From: Stylophora pistillata
Lineage: Eukaryota
Direction: 5' to 3'
Length of the DNA: 64,000 bases
Assembly (NCBI RefSeq): GCF_002571385.2
Contig: NW_019218064.1
Location: 240,414 to 304,413 of the forward strand
Shown: positions 3,942 through 55,228 of the stretch, piece by piece
Layout: every line of letters starts with the position of its first letter
How positions within the stretch are numbered: position 1 is the stretch's first letter
Translations under genes and position numbers: made by a program
The notes under the pieces: generated by a model
Told to the model about the DNA's origin: nothing
The model's database searches: none
Seen by the model: the letters and a program-made list of their open reading frames with translations, nothing else

Positions 3942-5726
3942 TTAACATTGGGTTTCTTTCAATGCAGCTAAGTTTAAAAGCGACGGTGAGAACTGGAAGT
4001 AAACCGATGTCAAATCTCGATGATTTAAAAATGCTTTCTTTTCGCAATCGACGCCTCCGTCATTTTTGATATCGTCAAACGAACGTTTAATTTCTAAGGA
4101 TGATACTTTATCAGCTGTGGGTTGCGAGTTTTTTCTCGGCACCAAATCCATTGATTCGGTCGTGTCGCCAATCATTTCATTTGGTGAAAATGACAAATCA
4201 TCTGTCGCAGGTTGTGTAGTCTTCATAATGAGTTGTTCGTTCAAGGGCTGCGCATTCGGTGTCTCTACTATACCAAAACGCCTGATTCTGACCATTCCAT
4301 GTTCTTGAGCTGGTTTAAATGAAGGTTCCTCGTTAATCTTTTCAAGTCTAGGTTGTGACTGCAGCTTAATAAATCTAAAGGAATCGTCCAATTGAACTGA
4401 GCCGGGGTTATTCCTGTTTGTAGTTCCTGATAGGGTCTTGTCCGGGTCGTTGGCAAATCCCTCTCTAAGGAAAGAAATCTTCCTTGACGCTTTTCGATGG
4501 GAACTTTCTGGACTGTTAGAAATTGAGTGCTTGTAAAGTCTCTGATTTTCCTTGAGCTCCAAAGGGCCGCCATTGTCACTTCTCGATCGGCTCAATTTTC
4601 GCCAAACAAAAGAAAAGGATTCGCTAATAGAGCTGATCTTTCGTAAATAACTCAGTTCACTTCTATCCACAGAGTCGTCAAACGACCCATCTTGTTTACG
4701 TTTACATAAGCTGGTAAGTATTCTCCTGAACCCCCTTTTGAAATCCCTGCTGAATATCCAGTAGATAACGGGGTTGAAAATACTGTTAGTGTACGTGAAC
4801 ATTCTACAGATGATTCCGACTATTTGTGAGTGATCTTGGTTCAGTCCGTCACCAAAATCTGACCAGAGCCAGAAAATCTCGTTTGGTAACCTGCAAGTGG
4901 CGAAGACTATGACGACCGTCACGAACATTTTGGTCGCTCGAATATTCTGATTAGCTTTTCCCAGCAAACTGTTATGTCTCTGACCTATCGTTACTCGGCT
5001 TGCTTTACGCTGAAAATCCATTTGGCGGTTGTTATAGTTTCCAACTACGTTCACTTGACTTGGACGTTGTTGAACTTTCTCAAACATGTTTGCACTTGAG
5101 CGCAAGTTGGACAGAGTCATGGTGTACATCACGCTCATGAACGCTAAGGGAATTCCGTACTGGCCAATAAAAAGAGCCAGTGTGTACACCTGCCTGTAGT
5201 GAAACGCTGGCCATGTTTCTTCGCAAGACTTGGTGGACCCTTCGCCCACCAAATTCAGGTAATAAATGTAAGGTACCACAAACAACAGAGCCACAAAATG
5301 CATGATCACTATAGAACATTTTACTTGCTTGGAACTGAGTCTTTGCTTAAAAGGATGCATAATAACTCGGTAACGATCCAATGAAATGATGGCCAGTGTC
5401 AGTGATGCAGAAATGGCAGACAAAGTTGCAAGTGGCCAAAGAGTTTTGCAAAGGATTCTTCCAAAGGGCCAAATGTAGCCTTTTTCCTCCAGTGCCAGGT
5501 CAAATGGAATGCTGGCCAGAGGGGTTATTAAATCGCAAACTGCAAGGTTGAGAATGAGCAGATTTGAGGGGTTCCTCATTCGTTTCATCTTGCAGATGAC
5601 GATAATAACCAGAGTATTCCCAAGAAGACACAAAAGAAGAATGAGAGAGTACATCGTGATTTTGAAAACCTTGAACGAAAGAGTTTCCTTGTTGCTATCT
5701 TCTGTCGAATTTAGGTTGACCGCCAT
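3942..5726 (-). CDS. GPCR-1: class A neuropeptide-receptor-like GPCR, 594 aa, long C-tail ending KETQC
   Basis: Seven hydrophobic segments with GN (TM1), NLAVCD (TM2), WPFG..C, SLDRY, ECL2 C-EETWP and NPVIY; single-exon CDS. Confidence 0.96.
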   Translation of the reverse strand: MAVNLNSTEDSNKETLSFKVFKITMYSLILLLCLLGNTLVIIVICKMKRMRNPSNLLILNLAVCDLITPLASIPFDLALEEKGYIWPFGRILCKTLWPLATLSAISASLTLAIISLDRYRVIMHPFKQRLSSKQVKCSIVIMHFVALLFVVPYIYYLNLVGEGSTKSCEETWPAFHYRQVYTLALFIGQYGIPLAFMSVMYTMTLSNLRSSANMFEKVQQRPSQVNVVGNYNNRQMDFQRKASRVTIGQRHNSLLGKANQNIRATKMFVTVVIVFATCRLPNEIFWLWSDFGDGLNQDHSQIVGIICRMFTYTNSIFNPVIYWIFSRDFKRGFRRILTSLCKRKQDGSFDDSVDRSELSYLRKISSISESFSFVWRKLSRSRSDNGGPLELKENQRLYKHSISNSPESSHRKASRKISFLREGFANDPDKTLSGTTNRNNPGSVQLDDSFRFIKLQSQPRLEKINEEPSFKPAQEHGMVRIRRFGIVETPNAQPLNEQLIMKTTQPATDDLSFSPNEMIGDTTESMDLVPRKNSQPTADKVSSLEIKRSFDDIKNDGGVDCEKKAFLNHRDLTSVYFQFSPSLLNLAALKETQC

Positions 5727-9745: not shown

Positions 9746-10815
9746 CAAGAAAATAAGACAATTACCTGCGTTCTTTCTTTCCTTCTTGTTCATCACTGTT
9801 TGTTTTGGCTTTTTTTTTTTTACTTCTACGAGAAGCTCACTTGTATCTCGGGTAGGAAATGGCTGCTAATCGTTTTAAACTTTGGCTTTGTACGTCAAAT
9901 CCATTCATCACCTACAATTATTCTCAAGCGTAAATGCGCTTAAGGATAACACCCTGTTTCCAAGGGTGCGCTACCTTAAAAATCGACCTCATATTGCACG
10001 CGAGGGCTCACAGATCAGATCATGGATACATTTAAAATCCAAACCTCGAAGTGTTTTTTAAAGAGTTTCAGGTTTGTAGATCTACCAGCTAAATTAATTA
10101 GTTTAAGTCACAGGCCAATAAGTTGTCTTCTGTCAAAGATTATAAACGTACTTATCAACAAAGCATTTCAATTAAATTTTTCTGTAGATCGTTGCGTTGA
10201 TTTCGCGTAAATCCGTCTCATCTGTAGCCCTCATGTTTCTCCATTCTGTCCGAACAGCTCTGGAGAAAAAATTTCTGAAATACAACCTGTTAAATTCACC
10301 CGTAAGTTCCTCTGTAGCCACGCGGAAAACTGTTAATTATTGAGCAGTTTTTAGCTTTCTTGGCGAAGATCTCTGATATTTTCACGGGATACGCCGCATT
10401 AATTTTCTACATGTCATTCTCGCCCTCCTTGGAGTTGTACATTCTCACAATTTCCGTCGCGATAACGGCCGCGGGTTATTACGTCCGAAGCCCCGAGGTC
10501 CTGTTAGGAATTTCAAGATCTTATGCGCAGATGCACCGCTGTTGATGACGGCCACTTCACATCGAAGGAAAACATGGCTTTCAAGAACGTGTAACAACGT
10601 ACACTGAAATCACCAGCCCTGTGTCATGAAGATTTCAGTGGTATGATGGGAACAGACGTTAAAGACGGATAAAGCTCATTTATCATGCTAATACATTTTG
10701 AAGAAGCCGGGTGAAAGATTTCATTACTGTAGCTCGCACTCGTCAAGCAGGATCAAATACGTTGAAATCTGCAGATGTTGTACTTCCTAACACAGACAAC
10801 ATTTTTGTCGTAAAG

Positions 10816-12108
10816 ATGGATTCTAACATAACATCCAATGCAAGTGTAACAACACTTTTTCCTTTCTATTCCAGCCAAGTGAGTTATGTTACTGATGCAA
10901 TAAATGCGAGCCATGTAAACGTTTCTACAGACTACCCTAATACGGCGCAATCGCTCGACTTTTGGATCGTAAAGCTTGTCCTTTATGGCGTCATTCTGCT
11001 CGGAAGCTCCGTGGGGAACAGCCTTGTAATTTACATCATCGTCAGCAACGTCCGAATGAGAACAGCCTCCAACTATTTAATAATGAACCTGGCGCTGTGT
11101 GATTTTGTCACGCCAGTTTTCAGCATTCCTTTTGATTTCTTTCTTGAGGAATACAACTACATCTGGATGTATGGCGCAGCTATGTGCAAAATCCTGTGGC
11201 CTTTGACAACAATGTCTTCTACTTCGGCTGCGTTAACCCTAGCCGCAATCTCGCTCGATCGCTATCGCGTTATAATGCACCCATTTCGACCACGTTTGAC
11301 GATGTTCAAGATCAAATGCATAATTGCCGCAGTTTACGTGTTTTCACTGTTGATGGTCGCTCCGTATTCGTATGTCCTTATTCTGAAAGGAAATGAATGC
11401 CGCGAAATATGGCCTGATATCTCCTTCAAGAAGTATTATACCTTGGGTCTTTTCCTTGTGCAATATTGCATGCCTTTGATTTTTATGGTGTTCATGTATT
11501 CGCTTGCGCTGAAAAATTTGTACACTAGCGCAGACAAGACCAGCGGCCAGAAAGCCGAGCAAGAACAGGCTGCCGTCAGCCGAAAAGTCAGTCGGACATC
11601 AACGAACTCGCGATCGTCAGCAGCCGAAGCTGAACCGAAATTGAAAAAGGTGTCGTCCACGGTGCGTTTGGTGCGTAAATTCTCATCCACTGTCAGGAGA
11701 GGGAAGACAGAAGCAAATAAAAGAGCAACTAAGATGTTTATGGCCATAGTAGGAGTTTTTACCATCTGCATGTTCCCCAATCAAGCACTTTGGTTATGGG
11801 CGGACTTCTATAATGAGGGGCAGAATCCAAGATTCTTGAACGCAGTGATAATCTGTTGGCTTTTCACGTATGCCAACAGTGTCTGTAACCCGGTCATTTA
11901 CGCTGTTTTTAGCCGGGACTTTCGCCGAGGTTTTAAAAGAGCTTTTAGAAAAGCGTTCTGTTTACATCGATACAAAAACCGACAAGTATATAAAACAGAC
12001 ATGGTCGAAACGCTGACAACAGAGCTGAAATGCGTAGCTTCTGGAGAGACTGAGAAACGAAAGAGAAAAAATGCTACTGTGCAACGACCTAAGCTTTATC
12101 TTTTGTGA
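10816..12108 (+). CDS. GPCR-2: class A neuropeptide-receptor-like GPCR, 430 aa from first ATG
   Basis: N-glycosylation-rich N-terminus (NITS, NAS, NVS), GN, NLALCD, SLDRY, C-REIWP, MFPNQ and NPVIY. The ORF-track start at 10711 is GTG; first ATG is 10816. Confidence 0.96.
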   Translation: MDSNITSNASVTTLFPFYSSQVSYVTDAINASHVNVSTDYPNTAQSLDFWIVKLVLYGVILLGSSVGNSLVIYIIVSNVRMRTASNYLIMNLALCDFVTPVFSIPFDFFLEEYNYIWMYGAAMCKILWPLTTMSSTSAALTLAAISLDRYRVIMHPFRPRLTMFKIKCIIAAVYVFSLLMVAPYSYVLILKGNECREIWPDISFKKYYTLGLFLVQYCMPLIFMVFMYSLALKNLYTSADKTSGQKAEQEQAAVSRKVSRTSTNSRSSAAEAEPKLKKVSSTVRLVRKFSSTVRRGKTEANKRATKMFMAIVGVFTICMFPNQALWLWADFYNEGQNPRFLNAVIICWLFTYANSVCNPVIYAVFSRDFRRGFKRAFRKAFCLHRYKNRQVYKTDMVETLTTELKCVASGETEKRKRKNATVQRPKLYLL

Positions 12109-16332: not shown

Positions 16333-17838
16333 ATGAATGGCAGCGAGACAGTCTCAGCTGGACCGAATAGAAGCTTTCCCACTGTATTTCCACATAATGT
16401 GCAAGGTGAATCTCAGGCCTTTAGTGTCATAAAGATATTCTTCTATTTCATCATCCTATCCGCCAGCACTTTTGGTAACAGCATGCTTGCTCACATCATC
16501 ATTCACACGAGAAAGATGCGGACCGCTAGTAACTTCCTGATATTAAACTTAGCCATTTGTGATTTAGTGACGCCGTTGATAAGCATTGTGTTTGATTTTA
16601 TCCTTGAAGAAAATAATTATGACTGGATTTACGGCGAAGCCATGTGTTCCATACTTTGGCCTACACAGACTTATTTTACTTGCGCGTCTTCGTTAACGCT
16701 TGCTGGAATCTCGCTGGATCGCTACAGAATAATCCTTCATCCATTCAAAATTCGCCTCACCAGCAAACAGATTAGTTTGTTAATTTTCCTGGTACATGTA
16801 TGCTCGCTAGTCGCTGTTGCTCCTTATGGTTATTTCCTCGTGCTGAGAAATGGTTCTTGTGAGGAAAACTGGCCCAAATTTTCCTACAGACAGGCTTACA
16901 CTTTTTTTTTGTTTCTGGTTCAATACGCAATGCCGCTCGTAATAATGATATTCATGTACACAATGGCTGTTCGAGCACTATGTCAAACTTCAAGGAAAAC
17001 ACGCGACAACTCAATATGTGCAAAAACTCCGCAATTTATCGTCAAGAAGCTTAAACTTGAAGCTAAACAGCAAGAAAAACATCGTGGACTATCTAAATCC
17101 CACTACACATTTATCAGACGGCTTGGCAAGCTCAATACAAGAGACATTTGGAAAACTCCTAATGCAAGGGCGACAAAAATGTTCATAGTGATTGTGACTG
17201 TCTTCGCAATATTTATGTTCCCCAATCAAATTGTGTGGTTGTGGGCAGATTTCGGTGGAGGGATAAATCATCCAGACTTTACCAAACTTTCCATTATTTG
17301 CTGGTTGTTTACATACACCAACAGTGTCGTGAACCCAGTAATTTTTGGTTTATTCAGCAAAGATTTTCGCAAAGGTTTTAGGAGGATTTTTCACAGCCTG
17401 CTGCGTTGCGAGAGATTAGTCGGGAAAGAGGATCTTGTAAGATTACGACGTCAAAGTACTAGCAAAACTCGTTCAGAAACGACGGAATCACATGGCACAG
17501 ATTACGGGTCGTGTACAAAAGACAGCAACATGTCCTGTCTTTTTCAAGATGAACAAAAGACACCGATGTTGGGAGGAAAAACTGATCATCAGTTTCACGA
17601 AATGTCCCCACCCTTAGCTCAACCAAATTTCGCTTCGAACAGAACCGCGATAAAATATTTCAGCAAACAGATGGTACCAAACCCGTTAAAAGCTTTTGAG
17701 CTCGAAGATGCAACTCGTCACTCCAGTGGCCTTCTTAGAGAAAATTATGTTGAACAATGGGGTACTTTGTCTAATTCAGAGTCTTACATTGAAACTTTGA
17801 CTGATGCGCTGAACAGCTCGCCGGAAACTAACTGTTAG
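16333..17838 (+). CDS. GPCR-3: class A neuropeptide-receptor-like GPCR, 501 aa, ends PETNC
   Basis: GN, NLAICD, SLDRY, C-EENWP, MFPNQIVWLWADFG and NPVIF. Confidence 0.96.
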   Translation: MNGSETVSAGPNRSFPTVFPHNVQGESQAFSVIKIFFYFIILSASTFGNSMLAHIIIHTRKMRTASNFLILNLAICDLVTPLISIVFDFILEENNYDWIYGEAMCSILWPTQTYFTCASSLTLAGISLDRYRIILHPFKIRLTSKQISLLIFLVHVCSLVAVAPYGYFLVLRNGSCEENWPKFSYRQAYTFFLFLVQYAMPLVIMIFMYTMAVRALCQTSRKTRDNSICAKTPQFIVKKLKLEAKQQEKHRGLSKSHYTFIRRLGKLNTRDIWKTPNARATKMFIVIVTVFAIFMFPNQIVWLWADFGGGINHPDFTKLSIICWLFTYTNSVVNPVIFGLFSKDFRKGFRRIFHSLLRCERLVGKEDLVRLRRQSTSKTRSETTESHGTDYGSCTKDSNMSCLFQDEQKTPMLGGKTDHQFHEMSPPLAQPNFASNRTAIKYFSKQMVPNPLKAFELEDATRHSSGLLRENYVEQWGTLSNSESYIETLTDALNSSPETNC

Positions 17839-25473: not shown

Positions 25474-25692
25474 TCAACAATTCGTTTCGGAAAAATTCCG
25501 AAGTACATCGTGTAGCGCTGAAGGCTTTAATGTCTCCGAGATCATTCTTGTATCATTGATAGAGCATGCATTTTCAAATTTAATTAGAGGATTAAAACAG
25601 TGTTTGTGAGCATTTTCGAGTGGAAGTTCCTTTGCCATCCCAAGCATATCGAACAGGATAGTTGTGTAAAAGCATTGGTCGACTCGGTCCTG
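25474..25692 (-). pseudogene. Out-of-frame remnant of the GPCR-4 C-terminal tail, ending SETNC-stop
   Basis: Hand translation gives QDRVDQCFYTTILFDMLGMAKELPLENAHKHCFNPLIKFENACSINDTRMISETLKPSALHDVLRNFSETNC*, which aligns with the GPCR-5 end ETLSKPGAHHFFEELRESSC*. Confidence 0.8.
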
Positions 25693-25781
25693 CTACATTT
25701 AGAGAAAATCATACAATTTACACTTCATAACATGGATGCTTTCTGATACGTTTTTTAGTAGATTGGAAAATATTTGTTGAT

Positions 25782-26921
25782 TCATAATGCAGGCCCTATT
25801 GCTCTGTCACTTGTGTAATCCCGAAGTGCAAAAGATTTCGCAGGATCTGGGTTTGAACTATGTAAATTGGCGTTCCTACTGACTTTGCGTACACATTTCC
25901 TAGTTTCGTTGCTAATCTTTCTCAAGGGCTTTATGGTAGTGCGGCCAATCCTTGCAAACCCAGACCTGAATTCCTTGTTTTTCAAGGCATAAATGAACGG
26001 ATTTAACACACTATTAGCGTAAGTAAAAAGACGACACACTACAGAAATGTAATGAAAAAATCTTTCGTCTGCGCCATTTCCAAAGTCCACCCAAAGCCAG
26101 AGAACTTGGTTCGGGAACATGCTGATGGCGAAGACAACCACAACAAGAACGAACATCTTTGCCAAGCGAATGTTTTGCTCTTTCCTTTTAAACTCAATAC
26201 TTTTATTACTAAAGGTGGATGACTGTCTTTTGAAGGAGTTTTTACTTTGTGTATCTGTGGAGAACAGTCTCTCAGTACTTTCCCGCAAACTGCGATGTAT
26301 GAGAGAGTATGTTACAGACATTGTCATCAAAGGTAAGGCGTACTGGAACAGAAACAGCACAACTGTGTACGCTTGTCTGTGGCAAAAACTTGGCCAGCTC
26401 TCGTCCCAAGAGTTTTCTTTATCAGTGAGATCCAAAGCGATGAAATAAGGAACACACAAGCCAATTGAAAAAGCCTGAATAGAGGATACGATGAGCAACA
26501 TCCTCTTCATCGAGAGACGTTTTGCAAACGGGTTCAAGAGAGTTCTGAGCCTATCTAAGCTGACAACTGCGAGGGTCAGTGAGGAGGAAGTTGAAAACGC
26601 CGTCTGGAATGGCCACAGAACTTTGCAAAAAGCTCTTCCAAATGGCCAAATGTAGTTCGTTTCTTCTAGCGCCAAATCAAACGGAATGCTCAGAGCTGGT
26701 GTGATGAGGTCGCATAATGCTAAGTTCAGAATCAACAGATTTGCTGGTGTCCTTTTCTCTTTTGCCCTCAAGATGACAGCTACGACCAAACTGTTGCCGA
26801 TACCACTTAAAACGAAGATTAAAACGTACAGTAAAACCTTTACCACTCGAAACTCTAGATATTCCAAGTTGGATACTTCATCAGACATATTACTCTCTCT
26901 TGCGCTTTCATTTACAGCCAT
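25782..26921 (-). CDS. GPCR-4: class A GPCR, 379 aa as read; likely decaying (ECL2 Cys>Trp, C-tail truncated by frameshift)
   Basis: GN, NLALCD, SLDRL, MFPNQVLWLWVDFG and NPFIY; first ATG 26921 (MAVNES). An ancestral-looking C-terminus lies out of frame at 25474-25692. Confidence 0.88.
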   Translation of the reverse strand: MAVNESARESNMSDEVSNLEYLEFRVVKVLLYVLIFVLSGIGNSLVVAVILRAKEKRTPANLLILNLALCDLITPALSIPFDLALEETNYIWPFGRAFCKVLWPFQTAFSTSSSLTLAVVSLDRLRTLLNPFAKRLSMKRMLLIVSSIQAFSIGLCVPYFIALDLTDKENSWDESWPSFCHRQAYTVVLFLFQYALPLMTMSVTYSLIHRSLRESTERLFSTDTQSKNSFKRQSSTFSNKSIEFKRKEQNIRLAKMFVLVVVVFAISMFPNQVLWLWVDFGNGADERFFHYISVVCRLFTYANSVLNPFIYALKNKEFRSGFARIGRTTIKPLRKISNETRKCVRKVSRNANLHSSNPDPAKSFALRDYTSDRAIGPAL

Positions 26922-29900
26922 TTTCAAATGATCCACTGGAAAAAAAATGTTGCAGTTGTGGTTGCTACGTGTCCTTTTTTGAGTTAATGAGACAATTAAG
27001 AAAGACTGCCAATCGACGCGACGCGTGATCGCTGTTCGCTACTAAAGGTTCTGATGGAACAACAAGAGACTTGCAATTTAAATTCATAGTCTATTCATGG
27101 TCTCGGTGATTGCCCACCGACGCATGTAGCAGTCATGTCCGTACCTTGAGATCGCTAAACGTAACATGCTTAATTAAATCAATTAACTTTATACGGTCGT
27201 TGTTCCTGTAGTACACAAAAACCACACAGTTGCTATTTTTAGAACAGACAGGTGCCAATACAAAAATACAAAGAGATGTAAACAATGCTTAAACAACAAA
27301 GAGATCTCAACAAACAGAAAAACAGATTAGCAGAAAGTGGCCCTCCAAACAATTTGGTGGCGAAGGAAGGAAAGTTCTGCTCAGTTGCTTTTACAATTAA
27401 AGATGAATCAACAAATAATTAAAGAGCACTAAAAACGTCACTTGTCTGAAAAGTACGTGGGGGACATCTTTAAGGCGGCTTTTGTAGACTCATCACAGAT
27501 CATCACTTACACTTTAATTAAAACATCAACAAGTTTCCGCACCATTGGGACAAAAGGAAGGCGAGCCTCTTAAAGTCACGTAAATGATTGATTTGTTTAT
27601 CGCTGACTAATGAAAAGATAAATGAATTAAGCGTAATACCTGACGAAGTAATTTCCAATCATTTGGTAGACGTTATTGTCATTAGTGTCAAGGATTTTAT
27701 TCATTTCGGCCTAATGCGGTTAGTATATGTCGGTGGAATTGACTTTCAAGGTCATGTAAGCATAAGTTTTGTTTTGTTTTTCTCAATATTTGCGATGAGT
27801 AATTTACAAAATAAATGTAAAATTCTTGGCTTTGATAGAAATGTTTTTGAAAATGATGGTAATTGTTGGTTTGTTGTTAAATAAAGCTATTTTGAGCGAC
27901 TATCTTCTATCAAACACTGATAGTAAATGAAAAGGGCCCACTTCGCATTTTTGCCGGCAAGGATCCTAGTCATTTCCTCATTTGCGTAACATCCAGATAC
28001 GTTTTAAATAACAATGATTCACCTCGAAAATTAATTAAGCCTATTTCAAGAAAATTAGTAACACGTACGGACAATTCCACGCCATATTTGGCAAAGGGGC
28101 ACAATGACTGGCCTAACCTCAAGACAGCACTGCAACCAAACAGGAATACGACTCATAGTTATTTTTATTACGAGATTAACAAAAAGCTTCACTCAAAGGC
28201 CTTTTCAGCGCTGTGGTAAGCTAACCATAAGAAGCTTATGCTCCAGCATTACAGAATAGGTAATATTCATTTGAATTGTTAATAATACCCTAACTCATGG
28301 CATCTGTCGGATGCTTTTAAGCTTTTAATATTACAATAATTCTTTAAATAGCTTGGACTACTTTGAAGGGTTTGGCAACCGATCGAACTCAGGTTGTCAA
28401 ATTTTCAGCCCCGTATTTCACATACATCGGCTGACAGAAAGTCAGTGGACTGAGGTCACGTCTGAGGCAAGTCGGTTTCTCTTGTGTCAAGTCATGAATC
28501 TACCACAACAAAAATTGAAGGAAAGTTATCTTTGGAATCCACATAACACCGCCCAGTTATTTTCCTTCTAGATTATTATGTCGAAGCTATTCTATTGTCA
28601 TGCTATATACTTGATGATGAAAGTTTCCTAAAACTTCAGTAGATTTCCCACACCGGCGGACACAGAGGCTCTCGAGCGTGGGTTTTACTTACAGCCCTCT
28701 TTCGGACACAGCTTTTTATTACACAATTCCGGTCACTTATGGAAAACATTATCGAAACTCCCCCGTGGTTTTCGCAAGCGAACATTGAATATTGTGTGCA
28801 TAGCACACCGAAATGTTTCTTAGTGAAGCTCAGTTGACAAAATATCCGATCACCGTGACGAATTCGTCTGGCTGAGGTTCGAAAACCTACAAGGGACTCA
28901 CAATTTTCTGGTATTACAACAAACATTTGATACCGTCATTCCGTCAAAAGGTATTAGATATTTCACAATTGCTAATCATAAGCAAACAATCTTTTTCCAC
29001 TGCTCACGTGTAAGTATAGGCGGTAGTCTGGCTTTTACTGAAACCCTTGGGAAACTGTCCCACACGCGCCAAAGTTCAGCTATGTCGAAACTGTCCAGTA
29101 TAAGGAAAGAGTTTCAAAAGGAAAATAGTAAATTTTGACCACGGCCATTTAATATGAATGTATTAAGAATTTGTAACAACTGGTAGACAGAAAATGTAGA
29201 TGAAATTGAAATACGTAATTCAAGAACCCGTAAGTAGGGAAGTTTAATAATTTCAATCGATCAACTGCAAAGTCGTGTTCAGAGGCGTTATGGTAATGTC
29301 TTATTTAATTTGTGTGGTCAATTACGATTGAGCATTAGAAAACTTCATTTTGGTTCAGCTACAAGAAGAGAAGCGAAATCAGTGTTGGCTTTCAAGGAAA
29401 GTAGCGACTTTCAAAATTCCATGTTAATTCTAGCGCTCTTCTCTCAGGAGGAGTTACATTAGCACAAGCCAATCAGAGCATAAGAAACGTCACTAAGAGC
29501 CAATGAAAATTCATCGTAAAAACAAGCAAACTGTTTAGAGCATCGTGCGAGTTTTTTTTGGACAAATCACAGTACGAAGTAAAGCAAAAATAATGCAATC
29601 TTTGATTACTCTCGATCCTAAATAGATGTAGACTTTGTGAATTTATAGTGACTTCAGAAATGGCTGGGCTACCACCTCGCACGCCCCGAGCATAAAAGTG
29701 GTTCTAAAAAATGTTCAAATCGAATTTAAAGGTTTGGTATCAGCCAGCTAAAGCTCTCCACATTTCCTCCTCGGAAATCCACCTTTAATCTTCCGTATAT
29801 CTTCTTTGTGCCTTCATCTTGACACATGTCTGTTCAGTTAGCGATGAAAAGGAAATAATCATTATAGTGTCCTAATGAAACTGAAGCCGTTCACGTAAAT

Positions 29901-31007: not shown

Positions 31008-32270
31008 TCAACATGAGCTTTCGCGAAGTTCTTCGAAGAAATGGTGCGCTCCAGGTTTTGAGAGGGTCTCGAGCAGCAATACCTCGTCTGAAGCTTCCAC
31101 GGAATTATAATTCTTGGCTCCTCTCGAATAGGTAGTAACATCTTTGCTGACGACGACATTTTGAATGGATGTTAGTGTATGGACATCGGCTGTGTCTGGG
31201 ATGAGCCCACTGGCACTCCTGCTGACCTTTTTAAGAACAAACTTCCTTGTCTCAGTGCTTATCTTTCTTAAGGGCTTCATACCAGCGCGACCAATCCTTG
31301 CAAATCCAGACCTAAATTCTTTGCTTTTCAGAGCATAGATGAACGGATTTAAAACACTGTTGGCGTAGGTGAACAGACGACACATCACAGAAATGTAATG
31401 AAACAGTCTGTTCTCCGCACCACGTCCAAAGTCTACCCAAAGCCAGAAGAATTGATTAGGTGACATGCCTATTGCAAATACCACTACAACGATGACGAAA
31501 ATTTTTGCCAAGTGAATGTTCTGTTCCCTGCGTTTCAATTCGCTTTCTTCTTTGCTTGAAGTCGAGTTGTTGCTGATGGTGTGATGTTGATGTCTATAAC
31601 TTCTTGTGCTCTCGGAAAAAAGCATTGTCACATTCGAACGTAAGCTTCGATAAATAAGCAGGTATGATACAGACATGGTTGTTAAAGGAAGAGCAAATTG
31701 AAACAGAAATAGCACAATGGTATAAACTTGGCTGTAGCCCGGTGGCCAAGTTTCTGTGCACGACTTTGGAGAGCTTTTGTATTGCAAAGTAATGAAATAA
31801 GGGATGCATAAAATAGTAGAGAAAACGTGAATTGCCACAACGGTCTTCACAATTCGCATAGATGATGGACGTTCACTCAAAGGCCTCGCAAGAGCTCTAA
31901 ATCTGTCCAAACTAATAACTGCCAAAGTTAAGGACGATGATGTCGAAAGCGCCGTCTGAAATGGCCACAGAATTTTGCACATCACTCTGCCGAACGGCCA
32001 CGCTTGGTTAAGCTCTTCCAAAGCCAAATCAAATGGAATGCTTAGAGCGGGTGTGAAGAGGTCGCAAAAAGCCAAATTCAGGACCAGAAGGTTTGGGGTC
32101 GTTCTCATTCCTGTGGCTCCAAGGATTACAATGGCCACTAAACTGTTTCCGATGCAACTTAAAATAAAAATTGCAACGTAAAGTGCTATCTTGACAGCAT
32201 GGAACTCCACGGATTCGGAAGCAATGGCATCGTTATTTCTCCCATCCAGACTGGTATTGTTGATTAACAT
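31008..32270 (-). CDS. GPCR-5: class A GPCR, 420 aa from first ATG, ends RESSC; closest paralog of GPCR-4
   Basis: GN, NLAFCD, SLDRF, C-TETWP, MSPNQFFWLWVDFG and NPFIY. Shares FHYISV.CRLFTYANSVLNPFIYALK.KEFRSGFARIGR with GPCR-4. Confidence 0.96.
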   Translation of the reverse strand: MLINNTSLDGRNNDAIASESVEFHAVKIALYVAIFILSCIGNSLVAIVILGATGMRTTPNLLVLNLAFCDLFTPALSIPFDLALEELNQAWPFGRVMCKILWPFQTALSTSSSLTLAVISLDRFRALARPLSERPSSMRIVKTVVAIHVFSTILCIPYFITLQYKSSPKSCTETWPPGYSQVYTIVLFLFQFALPLTTMSVSYLLIYRSLRSNVTMLFSESTRSYRHQHHTISNNSTSSKEESELKRREQNIHLAKIFVIVVVVFAIGMSPNQFFWLWVDFGRGAENRLFHYISVMCRLFTYANSVLNPFIYALKSKEFRSGFARIGRAGMKPLRKISTETRKFVLKKVSRSASGLIPDTADVHTLTSIQNVVVSKDVTTYSRGAKNYNSVEASDEVLLLETLSKPGAHHFFEELRESSC

Positions 32271-32584
32271 TTTCAAGCGACGTCTCCTCTAGTCACCAAT
32301 CTGCCCTCGCCTTTTCCGTGGGAAGCACTTGCCCAGAGTTTGCGTGATTTCAGTGAAATCTGTGATTCAAATCAACACCATACACAATTGGTTTTCATGA
32401 TGCAAACGTGACCATGGATATGAAAATATACATTTATATTACTCTCTATGTCGAACTCATCAATTGATGATCGAAAGCGTTAATCAGCCATGAACTTAAA
32501 CTACAAGAAACGCCGCTCGTCGAAGTCATTTGGGAAATTAAAACCACCTTGTATCCATCGTGATAATTCGTGGGAATCCGGCTG

Positions 32585-39240: not shown

Positions 39241-39243
39241 TAT

Positions 39244-44468: not shown

Positions 44469-45380
44469 ATGGAAAATCAAGCACTTTCACGGATCTTTCG
44501 AGGAAGCGAAACAATTCCTGGGCTCAACAACAACTCGCCAAGCACATTATCGACGGCTATGTCGTTGGGGGCACAGATAATCGCTCGGTTCCAAATCCCT
44601 AAGTATGTCTTCTAAGTCATCATCTTGACTTTAAGTATTGCTGGCAATACAGCTGTCGTACACATTATCAGGACTCAGAGGCAAGTTAAGAAAACGTCCT
44701 ATATCCTATTAATACTAAACTTGGCCACTTGCGACACCATTGATCCCACCATCAGCATTCCGATCGACTGGGTCTTTGAAGAGTCCGGCTACATGTGGGC
44801 CCTTGGGCCAATCTGTTGCAGGATACTTTGGCCCTTTCAGACAATGTTCTCCACTTCATCTGCCTTAACACTCACCATGATTTGCTACGACAGATATCGA
44901 GCGATTGTGCAACCGTTCAAGGCCCGAAGGATCACGAAAACTCACACCAAGCACTGCATCTTCGCATTTCATTTAACATCATGTATGTTGGTGATACCTT
45001 ATGTCAGTGTGCTGAGGTGGAAGGAGATGACTGCCAAGAAAACTGCCCTGTTTCAAGCCACAGAAGAACATACACTATAGTTCTCTTTCTTGTACAATAT
45101 GGAATACCGCTGGTTCTTATGATAACCCTGCATTCTCTTGCGCTCAGGACTCTCCGCGGAAAATCCAACTACACGAAACCGCAAAGGAATGGAAGTCAAC
45201 GGATAGAGAGAGTCACAGTCAGACCTATCTGCCATGAATCTTCACAGGAAAAAAAAGGAGCAAAACATTCGAGTCACCAAGATGTTTGTTGTGGTTGTTA
45301 TGGTGTTTTGCGTTGAGTATGTTCCCCAACCAAGTTCTGTGGTTATGGGTGGATTTCGGAAATGGAGAAGAGAGTGAGTA
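44469..45380 (+). pseudogene. GPCR-6 pseudogene (TM1-TM6), truncated by a Penelope-like insertion
   Basis: ATG 44469; in-frame TAA at 44613 in TM1 (FQIPKYVF*VIIL); frameshifts near 45015, 45250 (A run) and 45306. Motifs NLATCD, CYDRY, QYGIPL, EQNIRVTKMF and SMFPNQVLWLWVDFG remain. Confidence 0.93.
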
Positions 45381-45382
45381 CA

Positions 45383-46482: not shown

Positions 46483-46860
46483 AACCGCCTCCCGGTTAGC
46501 TCAATGGATAGAGCGCTGGACTGTTGTGCGGGAGGTCGAGGGTTCGAGCCCCGGCCGGACCAACACTCAGGGTCTTAAAATAATTGAGAAGAATTTGCTA
46601 CCTTTCTATAACATCAAGAAATGGTTAGATATTCTAGTCTTCTCGGATAGGGACGAATAAATGGAGGTCCCGTCTCCTGCAGGGTTGGGGTAGGAGACGT
46701 TAATTTCCCACACACGAGATTACTGTGTGATGGATGTCCTCCCCTGGGGTGGGATGGGTGGGAGGGTGGACTAGCACGAATGGTTCCTATGTTCCTTTCT
46801 AGTCCTTCCCCACTGCAAAACTTAATGCAGTGAAAATGGACTAAACTAAATTAAATTAAA
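46483..46860 (+). mobile_element. tRNA-derived SINE (same family as 1160-1514) with a different 3' tail ending in (C/TTAAA)n
   Basis: A box TAGCTCAATGG, B box GGTTCGAGCCC; body shared with the intronic copy up to GGGGTGGGATGGG. Confidence 0.85.
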
Positions 46861-47040: not shown

Positions 47041-48763
47041 ACACGAGAAATCCTCTTGCATTTTGCCAGCTATAGAGTTATGCAAATATCCATTTCTTCT
47101 GCTATTAACCATCATATGTACTTAACTACTGTCGCCTTTCCATGATGCGAAATGTAGACTTTGACAGTGATATTACTTTTAAGTTTTAAATGATCTGTTA
47201 TATCAAACAATTTATAAACTTCGCCTGTCATGAACTTTTCTCTAATTAAGCTAGCCAGTTTTCATGTCTATTACATCTTGGTTTTAACAATACCGGCTTA
47301 ATTACATCGGCGAAACAGAAATACAACTAGACGAACGTTTCTGACAACATAGAAAGGAATTAAAAAGACACGTACAAACCAATGGCTAGACACTTTAAAT
47401 TCCATAAAAATTCTAAGCGAAATATGGCGGTCTGTAGCCTCTCCCTACATCTGAGCAATTCGAAAAGCTGCAAAACTTTAGAACAAAATTTTATCTTTCA
47501 AATCAGATGTCTTAATTCCCACGGTATCAACGAATGCTTTTCATTCAAATAACTTCTTCTTTTCTTATCTTCATCTTTCCACCGCTAGTGAAGCTCCGTC
47601 TCTTTGTATAAAAACCACACATAACCCGCAATTGCTGAAATGTCGGCTTTAAAAACTCTTTATGGTAACAAATATACATTATCAACTCAGTTGATAAAAC
47701 AAGATCACCTTGTAATACCTCCCACGGACGCAGCACCACAGCCTCTTTAGAAACTTCCTTCCCTAATATATAGTTATGTCTACCTATTACTACTGGGGGC
47801 TATTACGTGTGTTTGCTTCGATTCATTACCGGATATAGTTTTGCACAGCGGGTGTTCCATTCGTTGCGTAGGCATGTTTTCATACAACCGAGAGTAATTT
47901 ACATGACTTACGCAAATGACACGAAAACCGTCAAACCAGTCTTATTTCAGAAGTACAGTTTTCAGAAACAGCATACCAAAAAACGCCCTTAAGATTTCCT
48001 TCCCCATAATACTTGTCTATCAATAGCAGCTTCTTGATATTTTAGCGGCAAAACGACTTAGTTTCATAATAAACGGAGTGAAAGTGCCGAGTCAAATGTA
48101 ACAAGAAGGGTCACAATGATACAAAATGCCGCCCCTCTTATGCAATAAAATTGTGTTGATGGTTTTTTCCAAGTTCACTTTTCCGCTGACGGTAAAATCA
48201 AAGGGAATTCGCCATCAATATTGTTTTCGTCGAGTTATGCTATCTTTTAAGCGATATCGCTAGATTAAAACGTCACTGAAGGAAGGCTAAAACGTAGGCA
48301 CTATAGGCTGGGGCGGAAGAAACAGGCAGCTGATTTTTCGAGAGAAATTACATGAATTGCTCTCGTCAACTGTTTAGGTTACGAAGTCGCATGAAATTCA
48401 TAATGGCCGGGCAGATTGAGTTGTTTTTTGATCAGCTAAAACACAAAAATGCATAAACGTCTGCAATATCAAACTATTTAATTATTTGATGTCATCGTTC
48501 CTATTTACTAATGAGGAGGTTGTAATATTTGTCTGTCCATGTATAAACTCTGAAATTATTGCATGCCGCGTTCCTTTGTGGACTTCCCAAACGCTCTTAC
48601 TTGATTAATCTTTCAAAACATTATCTGCCTGCAGATTGGTCCACAAAGCTTTTAGTAAATTACACTGTAAGCCGCGTGTTGAAAATTTAAACAACCTTAA
48701 ACGGCTTAATACGTTTTAATAGTCGAATTTCTGGAAGTGAATCTGACCAGGGAAGAAACAAAT

Positions 48764-50089
48764 ATGGCTAATTCAACTCTTTCCTCTGACGCTTCAAGAA
48801 AGACAGATTTGCATGTGGATACATTTTATCCGCCACCTGAAACACTGGCCTTTAAAATCCCAAAGATAGTCGTGTATTGTTCGATTCTTCTCGTCTGTAC
48901 TACTGGAAATGCAATGCTGATTGCGGTCATTCTTAGCTCAAGACGCATGAGATCTCTACCGAGTAAGATTCTCATTTTAAACTTGGCGTTTGCCGACCTT
49001 TTAACTTTGATCATGAGCATTCCATTTGATGTTGTACTGGAAGAAAATCACTACGTCTGGCCTTATGGAGCTGTTTTGTGCAAGTTGTTGTTCCCTGCAG
49101 CCACTATGCTTTCGACTTCTTCATCCCTCACTTTAGCCGCCATTTCGCTGGATAGGTACAAAACATTGCTTCATCCTTTCAAGTCAAAACTCTCGGTGAC
49201 CCAAGTGAAATGCATCCTTGTAGTGGTGGATTGGGTTTCTGTTTTATTTGTCGTTCCATACGCCGTGTTTCTTGGATTACAGAACAACATTTGCACAGAA
49301 GAATGGCCAGGGTTTTTGTATCGACAAATATACACTGTGTTTTTGGTCTCTGTTCAATACGCCCTTCCCTTGCTATTCATGATGACTATGTACATTCTCG
49401 CTTCTACAAAACTTTACGATGCGACCAAGAATGTAAGAAAAATGTCAATATCTTGTGAAAACGACAGACGCACATCTATGTCCTTTAGAGAACGTCTCGT
49501 GCGTCGAGAAAGCTTTGCCGTGAGCCAGGAACAAAACGTAAAAGTCACAAAAATGTTTGTTATCATTGTTGTTGCATTTGCCATTTGCACTCTTCCTAAC
49601 CAAGTGCTGTGGCTATGGATCGATTTTGGCAAAAATGGTGATGTCACCTCCTTTGCGAGAGAGATTATAATCTGCCGGTTTTTCACTTACACTAACGGCT
49701 GTGTAAATCCTATTATATTTTTCACATTTAGACGCGATTATCGTCGCGGTCTGCATAAGATCCTACGTAAAATGACCGGGAGAAAACCAGAGACAAACTT
49801 CGAGAGGATACGAAGGTTGTGGAGCAAATTTGACATTAGCCCGCAGGTTGGCAACGACACGAAGCTTAAGCGTCAGAGGAAAACGGGAATTCAGGAAAGA
49901 AGTCCATTCGTTGACGTAGAAAACTTAAAATCCCCAATCAAAAAATGTGGCAAATCGACACTACACTCACAACTACACAAACGTGAATCTTTACAGGCAG
50001 AGCAAACACTAAAAGCCCGCCATATCATTTCAACTACAAATGGAAGAAAACTGTCTCAATATGAAAGCATGGCAACTTCGTGGGTTTAG
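48764..50089 (+). CDS. GPCR-7: class A GPCR, 441 aa from first ATG, ends ATSWV
   Basis: GN, NLAFAD, WPYG..C, SLDRY, C-TEEWP, TLPNQVLWLWIDFG and NPIIF. Confidence 0.96.
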   Translation: MANSTLSSDASRKTDLHVDTFYPPPETLAFKIPKIVVYCSILLVCTTGNAMLIAVILSSRRMRSLPSKILILNLAFADLLTLIMSIPFDVVLEENHYVWPYGAVLCKLLFPAATMLSTSSSLTLAAISLDRYKTLLHPFKSKLSVTQVKCILVVVDWVSVLFVVPYAVFLGLQNNICTEEWPGFLYRQIYTVFLVSVQYALPLLFMMTMYILASTKLYDATKNVRKMSISCENDRRTSMSFRERLVRRESFAVSQEQNVKVTKMFVIIVVAFAICTLPNQVLWLWIDFGKNGDVTSFAREIIICRFFTYTNGCVNPIIFFTFRRDYRRGLHKILRKMTGRKPETNFERIRRLWSKFDISPQVGNDTKLKRQRKTGIQERSPFVDVENLKSPIKKCGKSTLHSQLHKRESLQAEQTLKARHIISTTNGRKLSQYESMATSWV

Positions 50090-53100: not shown

Positions 53101-53108
53101 ACATTTAG

Positions 53109-53630: not shown

Positions 53631-53767
53631 AATTCTTTGACTGTACCGCTCTACAAGAGATTTACAGTACATTTCGGGAAGGCGGCTGTTAGCCTACCCT
53701 TGTCACTCCATAAAGTTTGATTTTTCAGATAAATCAGTGTCATGATAAAATATGAAGAATTTCCCAA

Positions 53768-55228
53768 CTAACAGTCTGTCTGGGGAAGACCTATGAGAGA
53801 ATCTAACTTGTCCAACGCAATGGTGAGATCGCTTTCGTAAAAGGAAACGTTTATAGATATATTGCAGTTAGCATTCGAACTGCAAGGATCCGAGGCACTT
53901 TTCAAAGCTGGGAAACCCAGTTTATCTGCACTGAGTTGGTTCTCTTTCGAATTACCACTCGGTTGGTCCATCGAAGGGATGTCCAAGCTGTTTTTCGTTT
54001 TGTTACAGTCATGATTTGTCTTTGACTGGTGATCCAAAAAGCTCCCTGAATGTGTCGGAGCACTTTGAAATGATCCTCTGGGTGTCAAGAACCTTGGCGT
54101 GCTCAGTGATCCACGCGGTGTTAGCCACATAGGAGTGTACTTTCCATTTCCAACGGGAGAACTGCTGTCGTGTTTCATTGAGTTATCATCTCCGCAAGAC
54201 GACGGATGTCTGAAGAAGGCCACAAACCCCTGATGAAAATGGCGGTTAAACTTGTAGAAGATAAATGGATTTAAACAGCTATTGGCGTAGGTGAAGAGAC
54301 GACAGATGATGGCAATAATTGGGAAGAGTCTGTGGGTTTTCCCTCCAGCAAAGTCTCCCCAAATCCAAAGGACCTCAATCGGCAACGTAAACAAAGCGAA
54401 CACCACAACTATAAAAACAAAAACTTTAGTAACTTGAGCATTATGTTCCCTGTGCTGACTAAAATGTTTTTCTAAGGTGCTGCTTAATGAGCTTCCATCT
54501 TCTGAGTCTTTTAGCCCAGTGTCGGCCGGTTTTGATGACCCATTTCTTCTACCCTTCGACGATGCGGATGAAACTGATAAGGATCGTGCTCTGCTCGTGG
54601 TCGCGAAGAGATTCCATGCTGCGTGGATGTACATGAAGGCCATGAATATCAGTGGGAGAGCGTATTGAGCAAGAAACAGAACAAATGTGTAAATCTTGGA
54701 GAGTACTTCGTTCGGCCAAACTTCTTGACAGGTGGAGTTTGGTGACAATCGCGAGGTTATCAAATGGGGAACGACCAAGATCCCTGAACAGCAATGCACA
54801 AACGCAATAAGTATCTTGACAGTTCTTGTGTCCAAACGCTGTTTGAATGGATGCATCAGTGTTCTATATCGATCCAGTGATATTGCAGCCAGTGTAAGAG
54901 ATGAAGAAGTCGCGAATAACGTTGCAGTTGCTGGAAACAACTTGCACAAGGTGGACCCAAATGGCCACGTGTTGTTGTTTTCTACCAACACCATTTCAAG
55001 TGGAATGCTAATCAGCGGGGTCAACAAATCGCACAAAGCGAGATTTACAATGAAAAGATTGCCGGGAACGCGTTTTAAATGTTTAAACCTGCAAATGATT
55101 GTTATGACCATAGCATTGCCAAGGATACTCACGATCAAGATAATGACATAAAGAAGAGTCATTGTTACTTTGACTGCCATCTGGTCGTGGTACAAGTTTT
55201 GTACGGTTGCCTCTGATGTCGAGTTCAT
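53768..55228 (-). CDS. GPCR-8: class A GPCR, 486 aa from first ATG, ends PQTDC; most divergent intact member
   Basis: GN, NLALCD, WPFG..C, SLDRY, C-QEVWP, TLPIEVLWIWGDF and NPFIF. First ATG is 55228 (MNSTSE). Confidence 0.96.
   Translation of the reverse strand: MNSTSEATVQNLYHDQMAVKVTMTLLYVIILIVSILGNAMVITIICRFKHLKRVPGNLFIVNLALCDLLTPLISIPLEMVLVENNNTWPFGSTLCKLFPATATLFATSSSLTLAAISLDRYRTLMHPFKQRLDTRTVKILIAFVHCCSGILVVPHLITSRLSPNSTCQEVWPNEVLSKIYTFVLFLAQYALPLIFMAFMYIHAAWNLFATTSRARSLSVSSASSKGRRNGSSKPADTGLKDSEDGSSLSSTLEKHFSQHREHNAQVTKVFVFIVVVFALFTLPIEVLWIWGDFAGGKTHRLFPIIAIICRLFTYANSCLNPFIFYKFNRHFHQGFVAFFRHPSSCGDDNSMKHDSSSPVGNGKYTPMWLTPRGSLSTPRFLTPRGSFQSAPTHSGSFLDHQSKTNHDCNKTKNSLDIPSMDQPSGNSKENQLSADKLGFPALKSASDPCSSNANCNISINVSFYESDLTIALDKLDSLIGLPQTDC

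What the first reader, a model, noticed from the sequence alone, without database searches (positions are those of the whole stretch)
3942..53800. Conserved C-terminal [EQ]-[ST]-x-C-stop motif at the end of otherwise unalignable tails
Seen: GPCR-1 LLNLAALKETQC*, GPCR-3 LTDALNSSPETNC*, GPCR-5 FFEELRESSC*, GPCR-8 LDSLIGLPQTDC*, and the hidden GPCR-4 tail VLRNFSETNC*. Tail lengths vary widely and the rest does not align. Established: E-[ST]-x-hydrophobic-COOH is the class I PDZ-ligand pattern, and this is not a CaaX box because Cys is the last residue. GPCR-7 (TSWV) and the edge ORF (ETIL) end in canonical class I ligands. Inference: the cluster docks on a shared PDZ scaffold, and the terminal Cys could allow acylation or redox control. 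The preceding Leu/Phe-rich stretch may be part of the signal.
Basis: partly seen in the sequence, partly recalled or inferred. Interest (0 to 1): 0.8.

Follow-up and report, generated by a model that had tools for sequence, protein, structure and literature searches.

The report
Cysteine-ended docking tag on coral neuropeptide receptors
A cluster of coral neuropeptide-receptor genes ends in a tiny conserved tag (Glu-Ser/Thr-x-Cys, then stop) that corals, sea anemones and at least one jellyfish have kept, and that most likely docks the receptor tail onto a PDZ adaptor protein, a known kind of tag not described in the paper that characterised these receptors.

Summary
Four intact intronless class A GPCR genes in the window end in [EQ]-[ST]-x-C-stop. 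A fifth copy survives as a disconnected relic behind GPCR-4. About 80 of 107 database homologues from stony corals and anemones end the same way. The consensus is hydrophobic-hydrophobic-x-E-L-[RP]-E-T-D-C, with Cys and Ser/Thr at 100%, while the rest of each tail does not align.

The family matches the Nematostella PRGamide receptors: GPR222 ends ETYC and GPR223 ends ESRC. A Clytia jellyfish receptor ends ESDC.

Sister clades and more distant paralogues in the same genome end in canonical class I PDZ ligands such as ETIL, ETDV, ETSV and ETNV. The best reading is therefore a class I-type PDZ-binding motif with Cys at position 0. That kind is already known from hepatitis B core protein (ESQC), the human LH receptor (YTEC) and, as cited in PMC7806630, TACE. 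A fold of the coral GIPC PDZ domain with the GPCR-5 tail gave only weak support.

No binding, acylation or redox role is shown. The GPCR-4 tail is cut off by two frameshifts and two stops, and RNA contigs show no splicing. Neither assembly gap touches a motif. This is a new member of a known kind, of moderate interest.

The parts
3942..5726 (-). GPCR-1, intact intronless class A GPCR. Last codons E-T-Q-C plus TAA at 3942-3956.
   Evidence: orthologues P0076-P0078 end ETRC, ETEC, ETSC
10711..12108 (+). GPCR-2, same clade but ends KLYLL with no Cys motif. This end is conserved in orthologues P0091 and P0094.
16333..17838 (+). GPCR-3. Last codons E-T-N-C plus TAG at 17824-17838.
   Evidence: orthologues P0079, P0084-86 and P0090 end ETNC or ETDC
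25782..26936 (-). GPCR-4. The 7TM core is intact, but the ORF stops 68 aa after NPxxY and lacks the motif.
25617..25787 (-). Disrupted middle of the GPCR-4 tail. It holds two frameshifts and two in-frame stops relative to orthologue P0017.
   Evidence: RNA contigs are collinear with no joints
25474..25620 (-). Relic of the distal GPCR-4 tail in another frame, still ending S-E-T-N-C plus TGA (25474-25488).
31008..32276 (-). GPCR-5. Ends F-F-E-E-L-R-E-S-S-C plus TGA, with the last four codons and stop at 31008-31022. The real start is probably the ATG two codons in (P0001, 420 aa).
   Evidence: RNA contigs cross the stop collinearly
44511..45381 (+). GPCR-6 pseudogene. Fragments lie in three frames with stops, followed by a reverse-transcriptase-like insertion and the assembly gap. 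No tail is recoverable.
   Evidence: (L030, 5 stops)
48737..50089 (+). GPCR-7. Ends A-T-S-W-V, a canonical class I ligand. Orthologue P0088 ends ASWV and sister P0099 ends ETEC.
53768..55318 (-). GPCR-8. Last codons Q-T-D-C plus TAG at 53768-53782.
   Evidence: orthologues P0089, P0096, P0098 and P0100 end QTDC or QTEC
63553..64000 (-). 3' part of a ninth GPCR (560-aa ORF in L007) ending K-E-T-I-L. This is the same type of end as Nematostella PRGamide receptor GPR221 (RETIL).

Best explanation
**What it is.** The window holds a tandem array of intronless class A neuropeptide receptors. They belong to the cnidarian PRGamide-receptor family. The last residues of most members form a short linear motif, hydrophobic-hydrophobic-x-E-L-[R/P]-E-[T/S]-x-C-COOH, at the free end of a long, fast-evolving, disordered cytoplasmic tail.

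**How it most likely works (inferred).** The motif acts as a class I-type PDZ-binding motif in which Cys takes the place of the usual Val/Leu/Ile at position 0. It would insert into the peptide groove of a PDZ adaptor. That adaptor would control surface delivery, post-endocytic sorting or recycling, or local clustering of the receptor.

**Which adaptor.** GIPC is my first guess. PTPN3/4-like, Dlg/MAGI/Scribble and SNX27-type domains are alternatives.

**What the invariant Cys suggests.** Within the clade Cys is never exchanged, whereas Val, Leu, Ile and Phe interchange freely in the sister clades and more distant paralogues. This suggests a partner pocket tuned to Cys, or a second use of the thiol such as reversible palmitoylation that gates binding. 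That step is speculation.

**Shown:** the motif, its position, its age, its substitution pattern and the disorder of the tail. **Inferred:** binding, the partner and the cellular effect.
For: 1. **Conservation.** 80 of 107 homologues of GPCR-5 end in [EQD][ST]xC. In 80 distinct tails Cys at 0 and Thr/Ser at -2 are 100%. Glu at -3 is 94% with Gln as the rest, Leu at -5 is 86%, and a hydrophobic residue at -8 is 96%.
2. **Divergent tails.** The rest of the tails does not align. Motif codons vary synonymously and the stop codons differ.
3. **Tree.** In a tree of 127 receptors all Cys-ended tails fall in one 104-row clade (SH-aLRT 97). The nearest outgroups end ETIL, ETTL and ETSL. A further paralogue clade includes ETDV and ETAI ends, and more distant paralogues end ETNV, ETSV and ETDL.
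4. **Wider background.** Of 20 more distant GPCRs in the same genome, none ends in the Cys motif and 7 end in class I ligands.
5. **Nematostella.** Deorphanized PRGamide receptors end ETYC (GPR222), ESRC (GPR223), RETIL (GPR221) and ENLRETRL (GPR211). The same extended motif thus occurs with Leu or Cys last.
6. **Jellyfish.** Clytia TCONS_00067886 ends LLLLETMSESDC.
7. **Precedent.** The ESQC end of hepatitis B core is a class I motif ending in Cys, with a PTPN3-PDZ crystal structure. GIPC1 and PTPN3 were its best binders in a human PDZ panel. The same paper cites TACE and the LH receptor (YTEC, bound by GIPC) as further PDZ ligands ending in Cys. LH receptor sorting depends on GIPC and on the C-terminal Cys plus an upstream Leu.
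8. **Tail structure.** AlphaFold2 predicts the GPCR-5 tail as disordered (pLDDT under 50 for residues 350-396 and 413-420), with only two short low-confidence helices upstream.
9. **Candidate partner.** The genome has one GIPC gene whose single-exon PDZ domain matches mouse GIPC1 at E 1e-35.
10. **Complex prediction.** Weak support: score 0.46 against a best control of 0.01.
Against: - No binding experiment exists.
- Cys is not a canonical position-0 residue.
- The complex prediction is only 'weak support'. It was never calibrated on peptides or disordered chains, and it may reflect memory of solved PDZ-peptide complexes.
- If any hydrophobe would do, Cys should sometimes be replaced by Phe, which is one nucleotide away, yet it is not in 80 tails. 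Something beyond generic PDZ binding may therefore be selected.
- GPCR-2 (KLYLL) and Nematostella GPR220 (PSFD) lack a class I motif, and GPCR-4 has lost its tail, so the tag is dispensable for some paralogues.
- The RNA libraries also cover intergenic DNA at low depth, so they are weak proof of expression.
Confidence: 0.7

Rival explanations
1. The selected feature is a lipid anchor. The terminal Cys would be S-palmitoylated and pin the distal tail to the membrane. Its resemblance to a PDZ ligand would then be secondary or absent.
For: The terminal Cys443 of the dopamine D2 receptor is reported as its main palmitoylation site and is needed for surface expression. Cys is never replaced by another hydrophobe in 80 tails.
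Against: Palmitoylation does not explain the invariant Ser/Thr at -2 or Glu at -3. It also does not explain why sister clades and more distant paralogues keep the same E-T-x context with Val, Leu or Ile, which cannot be acylated. The D2 receptor Cys lies at the end of helix 8 near the membrane, whereas here it lies 108-272 residues beyond NPxxY.
Confidence: 0.1
2. The motif is read by a non-PDZ reader of free C-termini. Candidates are a C-degron ubiquitin-ligase adaptor, a TPR carboxylate clamp, or an intramolecular dock on the receptor's own cytoplasmic face.
For: The motif is acidic and strictly C-terminal, and the upstream residues at -5, -8, -9 and -12 show helix-like spacing.
Against: No C-degron or TPR ligand of this pattern is known to me (own knowledge). 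AlphaFold2 did not dock the tail on the receptor. The [ST]-x-hydrophobe pattern in the relatives is the PDZ signature.
Confidence: 0.08
3. The motif is a PDZ ligand for Mint/X11 or RIM, as with the D-D-W-C end of CaV2 calcium channels. It would place the receptors at release sites.
For: CaV2 channels of cnidarians and bilaterians end in DDWC, a non-canonical PDZ ligand ending in Cys that Mint binds, including in Nematostella.
Against: In that motif the Trp at -1 is the key residue, and changing DDWC to DDKC abolishes binding. Here position -1 is Asp, Asn, Glu, Ser, Gln or Thr and never Trp, while Ser/Thr at -2 is invariant.
Confidence: 0.07
4. There is no function. The shared ending is inherited by descent or spread by gene conversion among tandem copies.
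For: The genes are tandem paralogues, so their ends are not independent.
Against: The remaining 100-270 residues of the tails have diverged beyond alignment, yet the last residues are kept. The motif is also kept across corals, anemones and a hydrozoan. Codons and stop codons differ between copies.
Confidence: 0.02

Closest known systems
[quoted passage not shown]
   Same: Same [E]-[ST]-x-C-COOH pattern at a free C-terminus. The hepatitis B peptide binds the PTPN3 PDZ domain like a canonical class I ligand, and GIPC1 and PTPN3 are its top binders (PMC7806630). The LH receptor is a GPCR whose sorting needs GIPC and the terminal Cys plus an upstream Leu (PMC3924264 and its reference 41).
   Different: Those are single proteins of vertebrates or a virus. 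Here a whole old receptor clade keeps Cys without exception, with an extended upstream consensus (L at -5, hydrophobic at -8 and -9). No binding has been measured.
Nematostella vectensis PRGamide receptors (Thiel et al. 2024, eLife, PMC11087051)
   Same: Database hits P0074 and P0083 match parts of GPR223 and GPR222. The same TM2 and TM7 signatures are present. GPR222 and GPR223 end ETYC and ESRC, and GPR221 ends RETIL like the edge ORF.
   Different: The ligand of the coral receptors is untested. The paper never mentions PDZ or the C-terminal motif.
Canonical E-[ST]-x-V ligands of Dlg/PSD-95-type PDZ domains (Kv1.4 ETDV, NMDA receptor NR2 ESDV; own knowledge)
   Same: E-T-D or E-S-D at positions -3 to -1 is identical. 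Paralogues in the same genome end RETDV, YETSV and KETNV.
   Different: The last residue is Cys instead of Val.
CaV2 channel DDWC end bound by Mint and RIM PDZ domains (PMC11405698)
   Same: An old PDZ ligand ending in Cys, sitting on a disordered and divergent tail, and present in cnidarians.
   Different: It depends on Trp at -1 and has no Ser/Thr at -2.
Dopamine D2/D3 receptor terminal Cys
   Same: A GPCR that ends in Cys. The residue is both a GIPC site and the reported palmitoylation site (PMC4633242).
   Different: The D2 tail is very short and the Cys ends helix 8. Its motif (L-H-C) has no Ser/Thr at -2.

Membership tests
Class I PDZ-binding motif (x-[ST]-x-hydrophobic-COOH) | Lies at the extreme free C-terminus of the protein | tested here: met
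   A stop codon directly follows Cys in four intact ORFs. RNA contigs cross the GPCR-5 stop collinearly without joints. About 80 orthologue models end at the same residue.
Class I PDZ-binding motif (x-[ST]-x-hydrophobic-COOH) | Ser or Thr at position -2 | tested here: met
   Thr in 64 and Ser in 16 of 80 distinct tails.
Class I PDZ-binding motif (x-[ST]-x-hydrophobic-COOH) | Hydrophobic residue (Val, Leu, Ile, Phe, Ala, Met) at position 0 | tested here: not met
   Position 0 is Cys in 80 of 80 tails. Cys is documented as accepted by class I PDZ domains, so this is the non-canonical subtype. Sister clades carry Leu, and more distant paralogues carry Val, Leu, Ile or Phe.
Class I PDZ-binding motif (x-[ST]-x-hydrophobic-COOH) | Accessible, unstructured context | tested here: met
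   In the AlphaFold2 model pLDDT is under 50 for residues 350-396 and 413-420 of GPCR-5.
Class I PDZ-binding motif (x-[ST]-x-hydrophobic-COOH) | Physical binding to a PDZ domain | tested here: inconclusive
   Only an in-silico test was possible. Coral GIPC PDZ with the last 32 aa of GPCR-5 gave weak support: 0.46 against a best control of 0.01. Runs agree in at least 93% of contacts and the partner pLDDT is about 50.
Cnidarian PRGamide / PRXamide receptor family (class A GPCR) | Rhodopsin-type 7TM domain | tested here: met
   PF00001 matches at E 1e-41 to 5e-52 for all seven intact ORFs.
Cnidarian PRGamide / PRXamide receptor family (class A GPCR) | Orthology or close kinship to deorphanized Nematostella PRGamide receptors | tested here: met
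   P0074 (E 1e-72, 48% identity to GPCR-5) and P0083 (E 4e-66) are partial records of GPR223 and GPR222, as shown by word matches in the paper's sequence files. No joint tree with all 13 receptors was built.
Cnidarian PRGamide / PRXamide receptor family (class A GPCR) | Activation by PRGamide peptide | not testable with these tools
   Needs a cell-based assay as in PMC11087051.
CaaX prenylation box | Cys at the fourth residue from the end, followed by two aliphatic residues and one more | tested here: not met
   Cys is the last residue, and positions -3 to -1 are Glu, Ser/Thr and a polar residue.
CaV2-type D/E-x-W-C Mint ligand | Trp at position -1 | tested here: not met
   The residues listed at -1 (the six commonest, 76 of 80 tails) are Asp 51, Asn 8, Glu 6, Ser 4, Gln 4 and Thr 3. 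No terminus in the full list has Trp before the Cys.

The most novel reading that the evidence does not exclude
The terminal Cys is required in its own right and is not just a tolerated hydrophobe. This receptor clade would then use a switchable docking tag. The free thiol at position 0 would be reversibly palmitoylated or oxidised, which would turn PDZ binding off and on. Alternatively, it would be read by a cnidarian PDZ domain specialised for Cys. Either way, one neuropeptide (PRGamide) would have receptor subtypes with differently regulated trafficking.
Probability: 0.2. Interest if true: 0.7.

Novelty: new member of a known kind. Interest (0 to 1): 0.45.

Why it matters
PRGamide has at least 13 receptors in Nematostella, with distinct cell-type expression (PMC11087051). 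What distinguishes them beyond expression is open. A conserved C-terminal docking code could sort these paralogues to different adaptors, membrane domains or recycling routes in a nerve net. The code comes in several forms: a Cys-ended version, Leu/Val/Ala-ended versions, and none.

The motif is short, old and easy to mutate, and Nematostella is genetically tractable, so the idea can be tested directly. It also adds a large natural set of Cys-ended class I ligands to a class that structural work calls sparse (PMC7806630).

Tried and rejected
- **Chance.** Rejected. Non-GPCR stops show the motif at about the expected background rate, 3 of about 6950.
- **Splicing of the GPCR-4 tail.** Rejected. 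RNA contigs X1 (25528-27174) and X3 (25425-26277) are collinear with no joints, and they agree with the genome at both frameshift sites.
- **CaaX box or Rab-type prenylation.** Rejected on position.
- **Mint-type DDWC ligand.** Unlikely, because there is no Trp at -1.
- **Complex prediction (coral GIPC PDZ with GPCR-5 tail).** It passed the mark only weakly, 0.46 against a best control of 0.01. The tool states that passes at 0.60 or under are more often wrong than right unless the guess was already likely. I use it only as a hint.
- **AlphaFold2 of GPCR-5 with 47 aligned homologues.** It gave no confident structure or docking for the tail.
- **Proteome-wide count of [EQ][ST]xC ends.** This could not be done. 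Only 47 paralogues of this genome were read.
- **Earlier scan notes.** Searches gave nothing on this motif.
- **Homologue records P0002 and P0064.** They continue past the Cys with Trp. In the window's GPCR-5, the closest relative of P0002, the stop after the Cys is TGA. I take these for gene calls made with a TGA=Trp code, not for real losses. This was not checked on their DNA.
- **Spliced GIPC protein.** Not built. Only the single exon holding the whole PDZ domain (L035:330-629) was used, by reference.
- **Assembly gaps.** Not filled or looked up.
Full report
**What is in the window.**
- The window is G000:C280:240414-304413 of a roughly 398 Mb stony-coral assembly. Named homologues come from Oculina, Orbicella, Montipora, Actinia and Nematostella.
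- It carries nine related, intronless class A GPCR genes. Seven are intact ORFs, each with a PF00001 match at E 1e-41 to 5e-52.
- GPCR-6 (44511-45381) is a pseudogene. It lies in three frames with stops and is followed by a reverse-transcriptase-like insertion and an assembly gap.
- The ninth gene runs off the right edge. It is a 560-aa ORF in L007.
- The ORF tool uses bacterial start codons, so several listed N-termini are over-extended. This does not affect the C-termini.

**Gaps first.**
- The unread stretches at 36904-37669 and 45615-46482 lie in intergenic or repeat DNA and behind the GPCR-6 fragment.
- The two long ORFs listed across the second gap are runs of X.
- No motif-bearing end is near a gap, and no claim here depends on continuity across one.

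**The observation.**
- GPCR-1, -3, -5 and -8 end in KETQC, PETNC, RESSC and PQTDC, each directly followed by a stop.
- In all six frames only 8 of 6956 stops are preceded by [EQ][ST]xC. Five of them are these four ends plus a frame downstream of GPCR-4.
- Tails are 108-272 residues long after NPxxY and give no blastp match better than E 0.017 between paralogues.
- Thr codons (ACC, ACT, ACG, ACA, and AGC for Ser) and stop codons (TAA, TAG, TGA) differ between copies. What is conserved is therefore the protein sequence and not a DNA block.

**GPCR-4.**
- Its orthologue P0017 is a continuous 489-aa protein ending PETNC.
- The window copy follows it at 82% identity to residue 381. It then shifts frame, passes two in-frame stops and shifts frame again. 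It ends in a recognisable 49-residue relic with SETNC and a stop.
- RNA-library contigs from two studies cover 25528-27174 and 25425-26277 collinearly, with no joints and no single-base differences at the shift sites. The breaks are therefore real and not spliced out.
- One of these contigs also lacks 17 bases inside the relic, as expected for a stretch no longer under constraint.
- GPCR-4 therefore most likely makes a receptor with a short tail and no tag.
- The same libraries cover intergenic DNA at lower depth, so they are weak evidence of expression.

**Relatives.**
- Of 107 homologues of GPCR-5 at E 1e-20 or better, 80 end in [EQD][ST]xC.
- Right-justified, the 80 distinct tails give the following profile:

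| Position | Residues |
|---|---|
| 0 | Cys 100% |
| -1 | Asp 64% |
| -2 | Thr/Ser 100% |
| -3 | Glu 94%, Gln the rest |
| -4 | Arg or Pro |
| -5 | Leu 86% |
| -6 | Glu 64% |
| -8 | Leu/Phe/Ile 96% |
| -9 | mostly hydrophobic |

- Some exceptions look like artefacts. P0002 and P0064 continue past the Cys with Trp. In the window's GPCR-5, the closest relative of P0002, the stop after the Cys is TGA, which suggests gene calling with a TGA=Trp code.
- In a maximum-likelihood tree of 127 receptors all Cys-ended tails lie in one 104-row clade (SH-aLRT 97). The label needs 14 changes against a mean of 38 in shuffles.
- The nearest outgroup is the edge-ORF clade (ETIL, ETTL, ETSL). A paralogue clade on contig C276 includes RETDV and KETAI ends. 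More distant paralogues end YETSV (twice), KETNV, QETDL, FESSV and similar.
- Twenty still more distant GPCRs of the genome include no Cys motif and seven class I ends.
- Inside the Cys clade there are a few secondary replacements. The GPCR-7 lineage has SWV while its sister has ETEC, and the GPCR-2 lineage has KLYLL.

**Naming the family.**
- Words from the two Nematostella partial hits (P0074, P0083) match the full-length receptors GPR223 and GPR222 in the sequence files of Thiel et al. 2024 (PMC11087051). Both are deorphanized PRGamide receptors.
- Their full sequences end KLQESRC and DLPETYC. Of the other PRGamide receptors in that part of the file, seven end in class I-type ligands: RETIL (GPR221), ENLRETRL (GPR211), SAV, TKV, SFV, STA and SIA. 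GPR219 ends TVFI and GPR220 ends PSFD.
- GPR211 shares the extended L-R-E-T context with the coral tails but ends in Leu. This ties the Cys-ended and Leu-ended versions together.
- The paper does not contain the word PDZ.
- The motif is older than Hexacorallia. Clytia hemisphaerica TCONS_00067886, a hydrozoan receptor of the same TM2 type and not the MIH receptor, ends LLLLETMSESDC. A sequence listed next to Alatina entries ends LLKSMRETDC. Its header was cut off, so the species is only probable.

**What it most likely does.**
- The pattern is Glu at -3, Ser/Thr at -2, a free choice at -1 and a small apolar residue with a free carboxylate at 0. It sits on a disordered tail (AlphaFold2 pLDDT under 50 for residues 350-396 and 413-420). 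This is the signature of a class I PDZ ligand.
- Cys at position 0 is unusual but documented:
  - The ESQC end of hepatitis B core binds the PTPN3 PDZ domain like a canonical ligand. GIPC1 and PTPN3 are its best binders in a human PDZ panel, followed by MAGI, DLG, SCRIB, MPDZ and SNX27.
  - The same paper cites TACE and the LH receptor (YTEC, bound by GIPC) as further examples.
  - LH receptor sorting to pre-early endosomes needs GIPC, and a transferable motif of the terminal Cys plus an upstream Leu is cited.
- The coral genome has a single GIPC gene on contig C96. Its PDZ domain lies in one exon (L035:330-629) and matches mouse GIPC1 at E 1e-35. I used that exon by reference and built no joined, spliced model.
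- Folding the exon with the last 32 residues of GPCR-5 gave weak support: 0.46 against a best control of 0.01. The runs agree in at least 93% of contacts and the partner pLDDT is about 50.
- By the tool's own counts, such low passes are more often wrong than right unless the guess was already likely. Peptides were not part of its calibration. I treat it as a hint only.

**What stays open.**
- Within the clade Cys is never exchanged, not even for Phe, which is one nucleotide away. In the sister clades and more distant paralogues Val, Leu, Ile and Phe interchange.
- That points either to a partner pocket tuned to Cys or to a second use of the thiol.
- The D2 dopamine receptor is a precedent. Its terminal Cys is both the GIPC site and the reported palmitoylation site.
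- The CaV2 DDWC end bound by Mint shows that cnidarians have other old Cys-ended PDZ ligands. That motif depends on Trp at -1, which is absent here.

**Verdict.**
- The PDZ reading is the best supported. It puts these receptors in a known kind, the non-canonical class I ligand ending in Cys.
- The shared scaffold, acylation and redox ideas remain untested.
- The finding is a new member of a known kind. It has some added value because of its age, its strictness and its link to a deorphanized receptor family.

Noticed in passing
window 25474-25800 (-): The GPCR-4 tail is cut off from the receptor by two frameshifts and two stops. One RNA-library contig also lacks 17 bases (near 25509-25527) inside the relic, which suggests relaxed constraint.
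   Followed up: yes
window 44511-45614 (+): The GPCR-6 pseudogene lies in three frames with stops. It runs into a reverse-transcriptase-like ORF (from about 45381) that ends at the assembly gap.
   Followed up: partly
window 10711-12108 (+): GPCR-2 and its orthologues (P0091, P0094) keep a different end, PKLYLL. It could be a class II PDZ ligand or a di-leucine signal.
   Followed up: no
P0002 and P0064 (homologue records): Both continue past the conserved Cys with Trp. The window's GPCR-5, the closest relative of P0002, has a TGA stop after the Cys. These are probably database gene calls made with a TGA=Trp code.
   Followed up: no
window 1425-1880 (-) and 46483-46660 (+); L035:2800-4400: A repeat-encoded peptide (…ALDC…GRGFEP…/…VEGSSPGRT…) recurs in the window. 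The GIPC intron holds a tandem array of units about 251 bases long that encodes related peptides. This is probably a SINE-like element.
   Followed up: no
Nematostella GPR19 (LRWamide1 receptor), PMC11087051 source data: A receptor for a different peptide ends NETPC. The E-T-x-C end is therefore not exclusive to PRGamide receptors.
   Followed up: no
window 28158-29983: Intergenic DNA between GPCR-4 and GPCR-5 is covered by contigs from RNA libraries at depth 2-9. This could be unannotated transcription, a repeat, or DNA carry-over.
   Followed up: no
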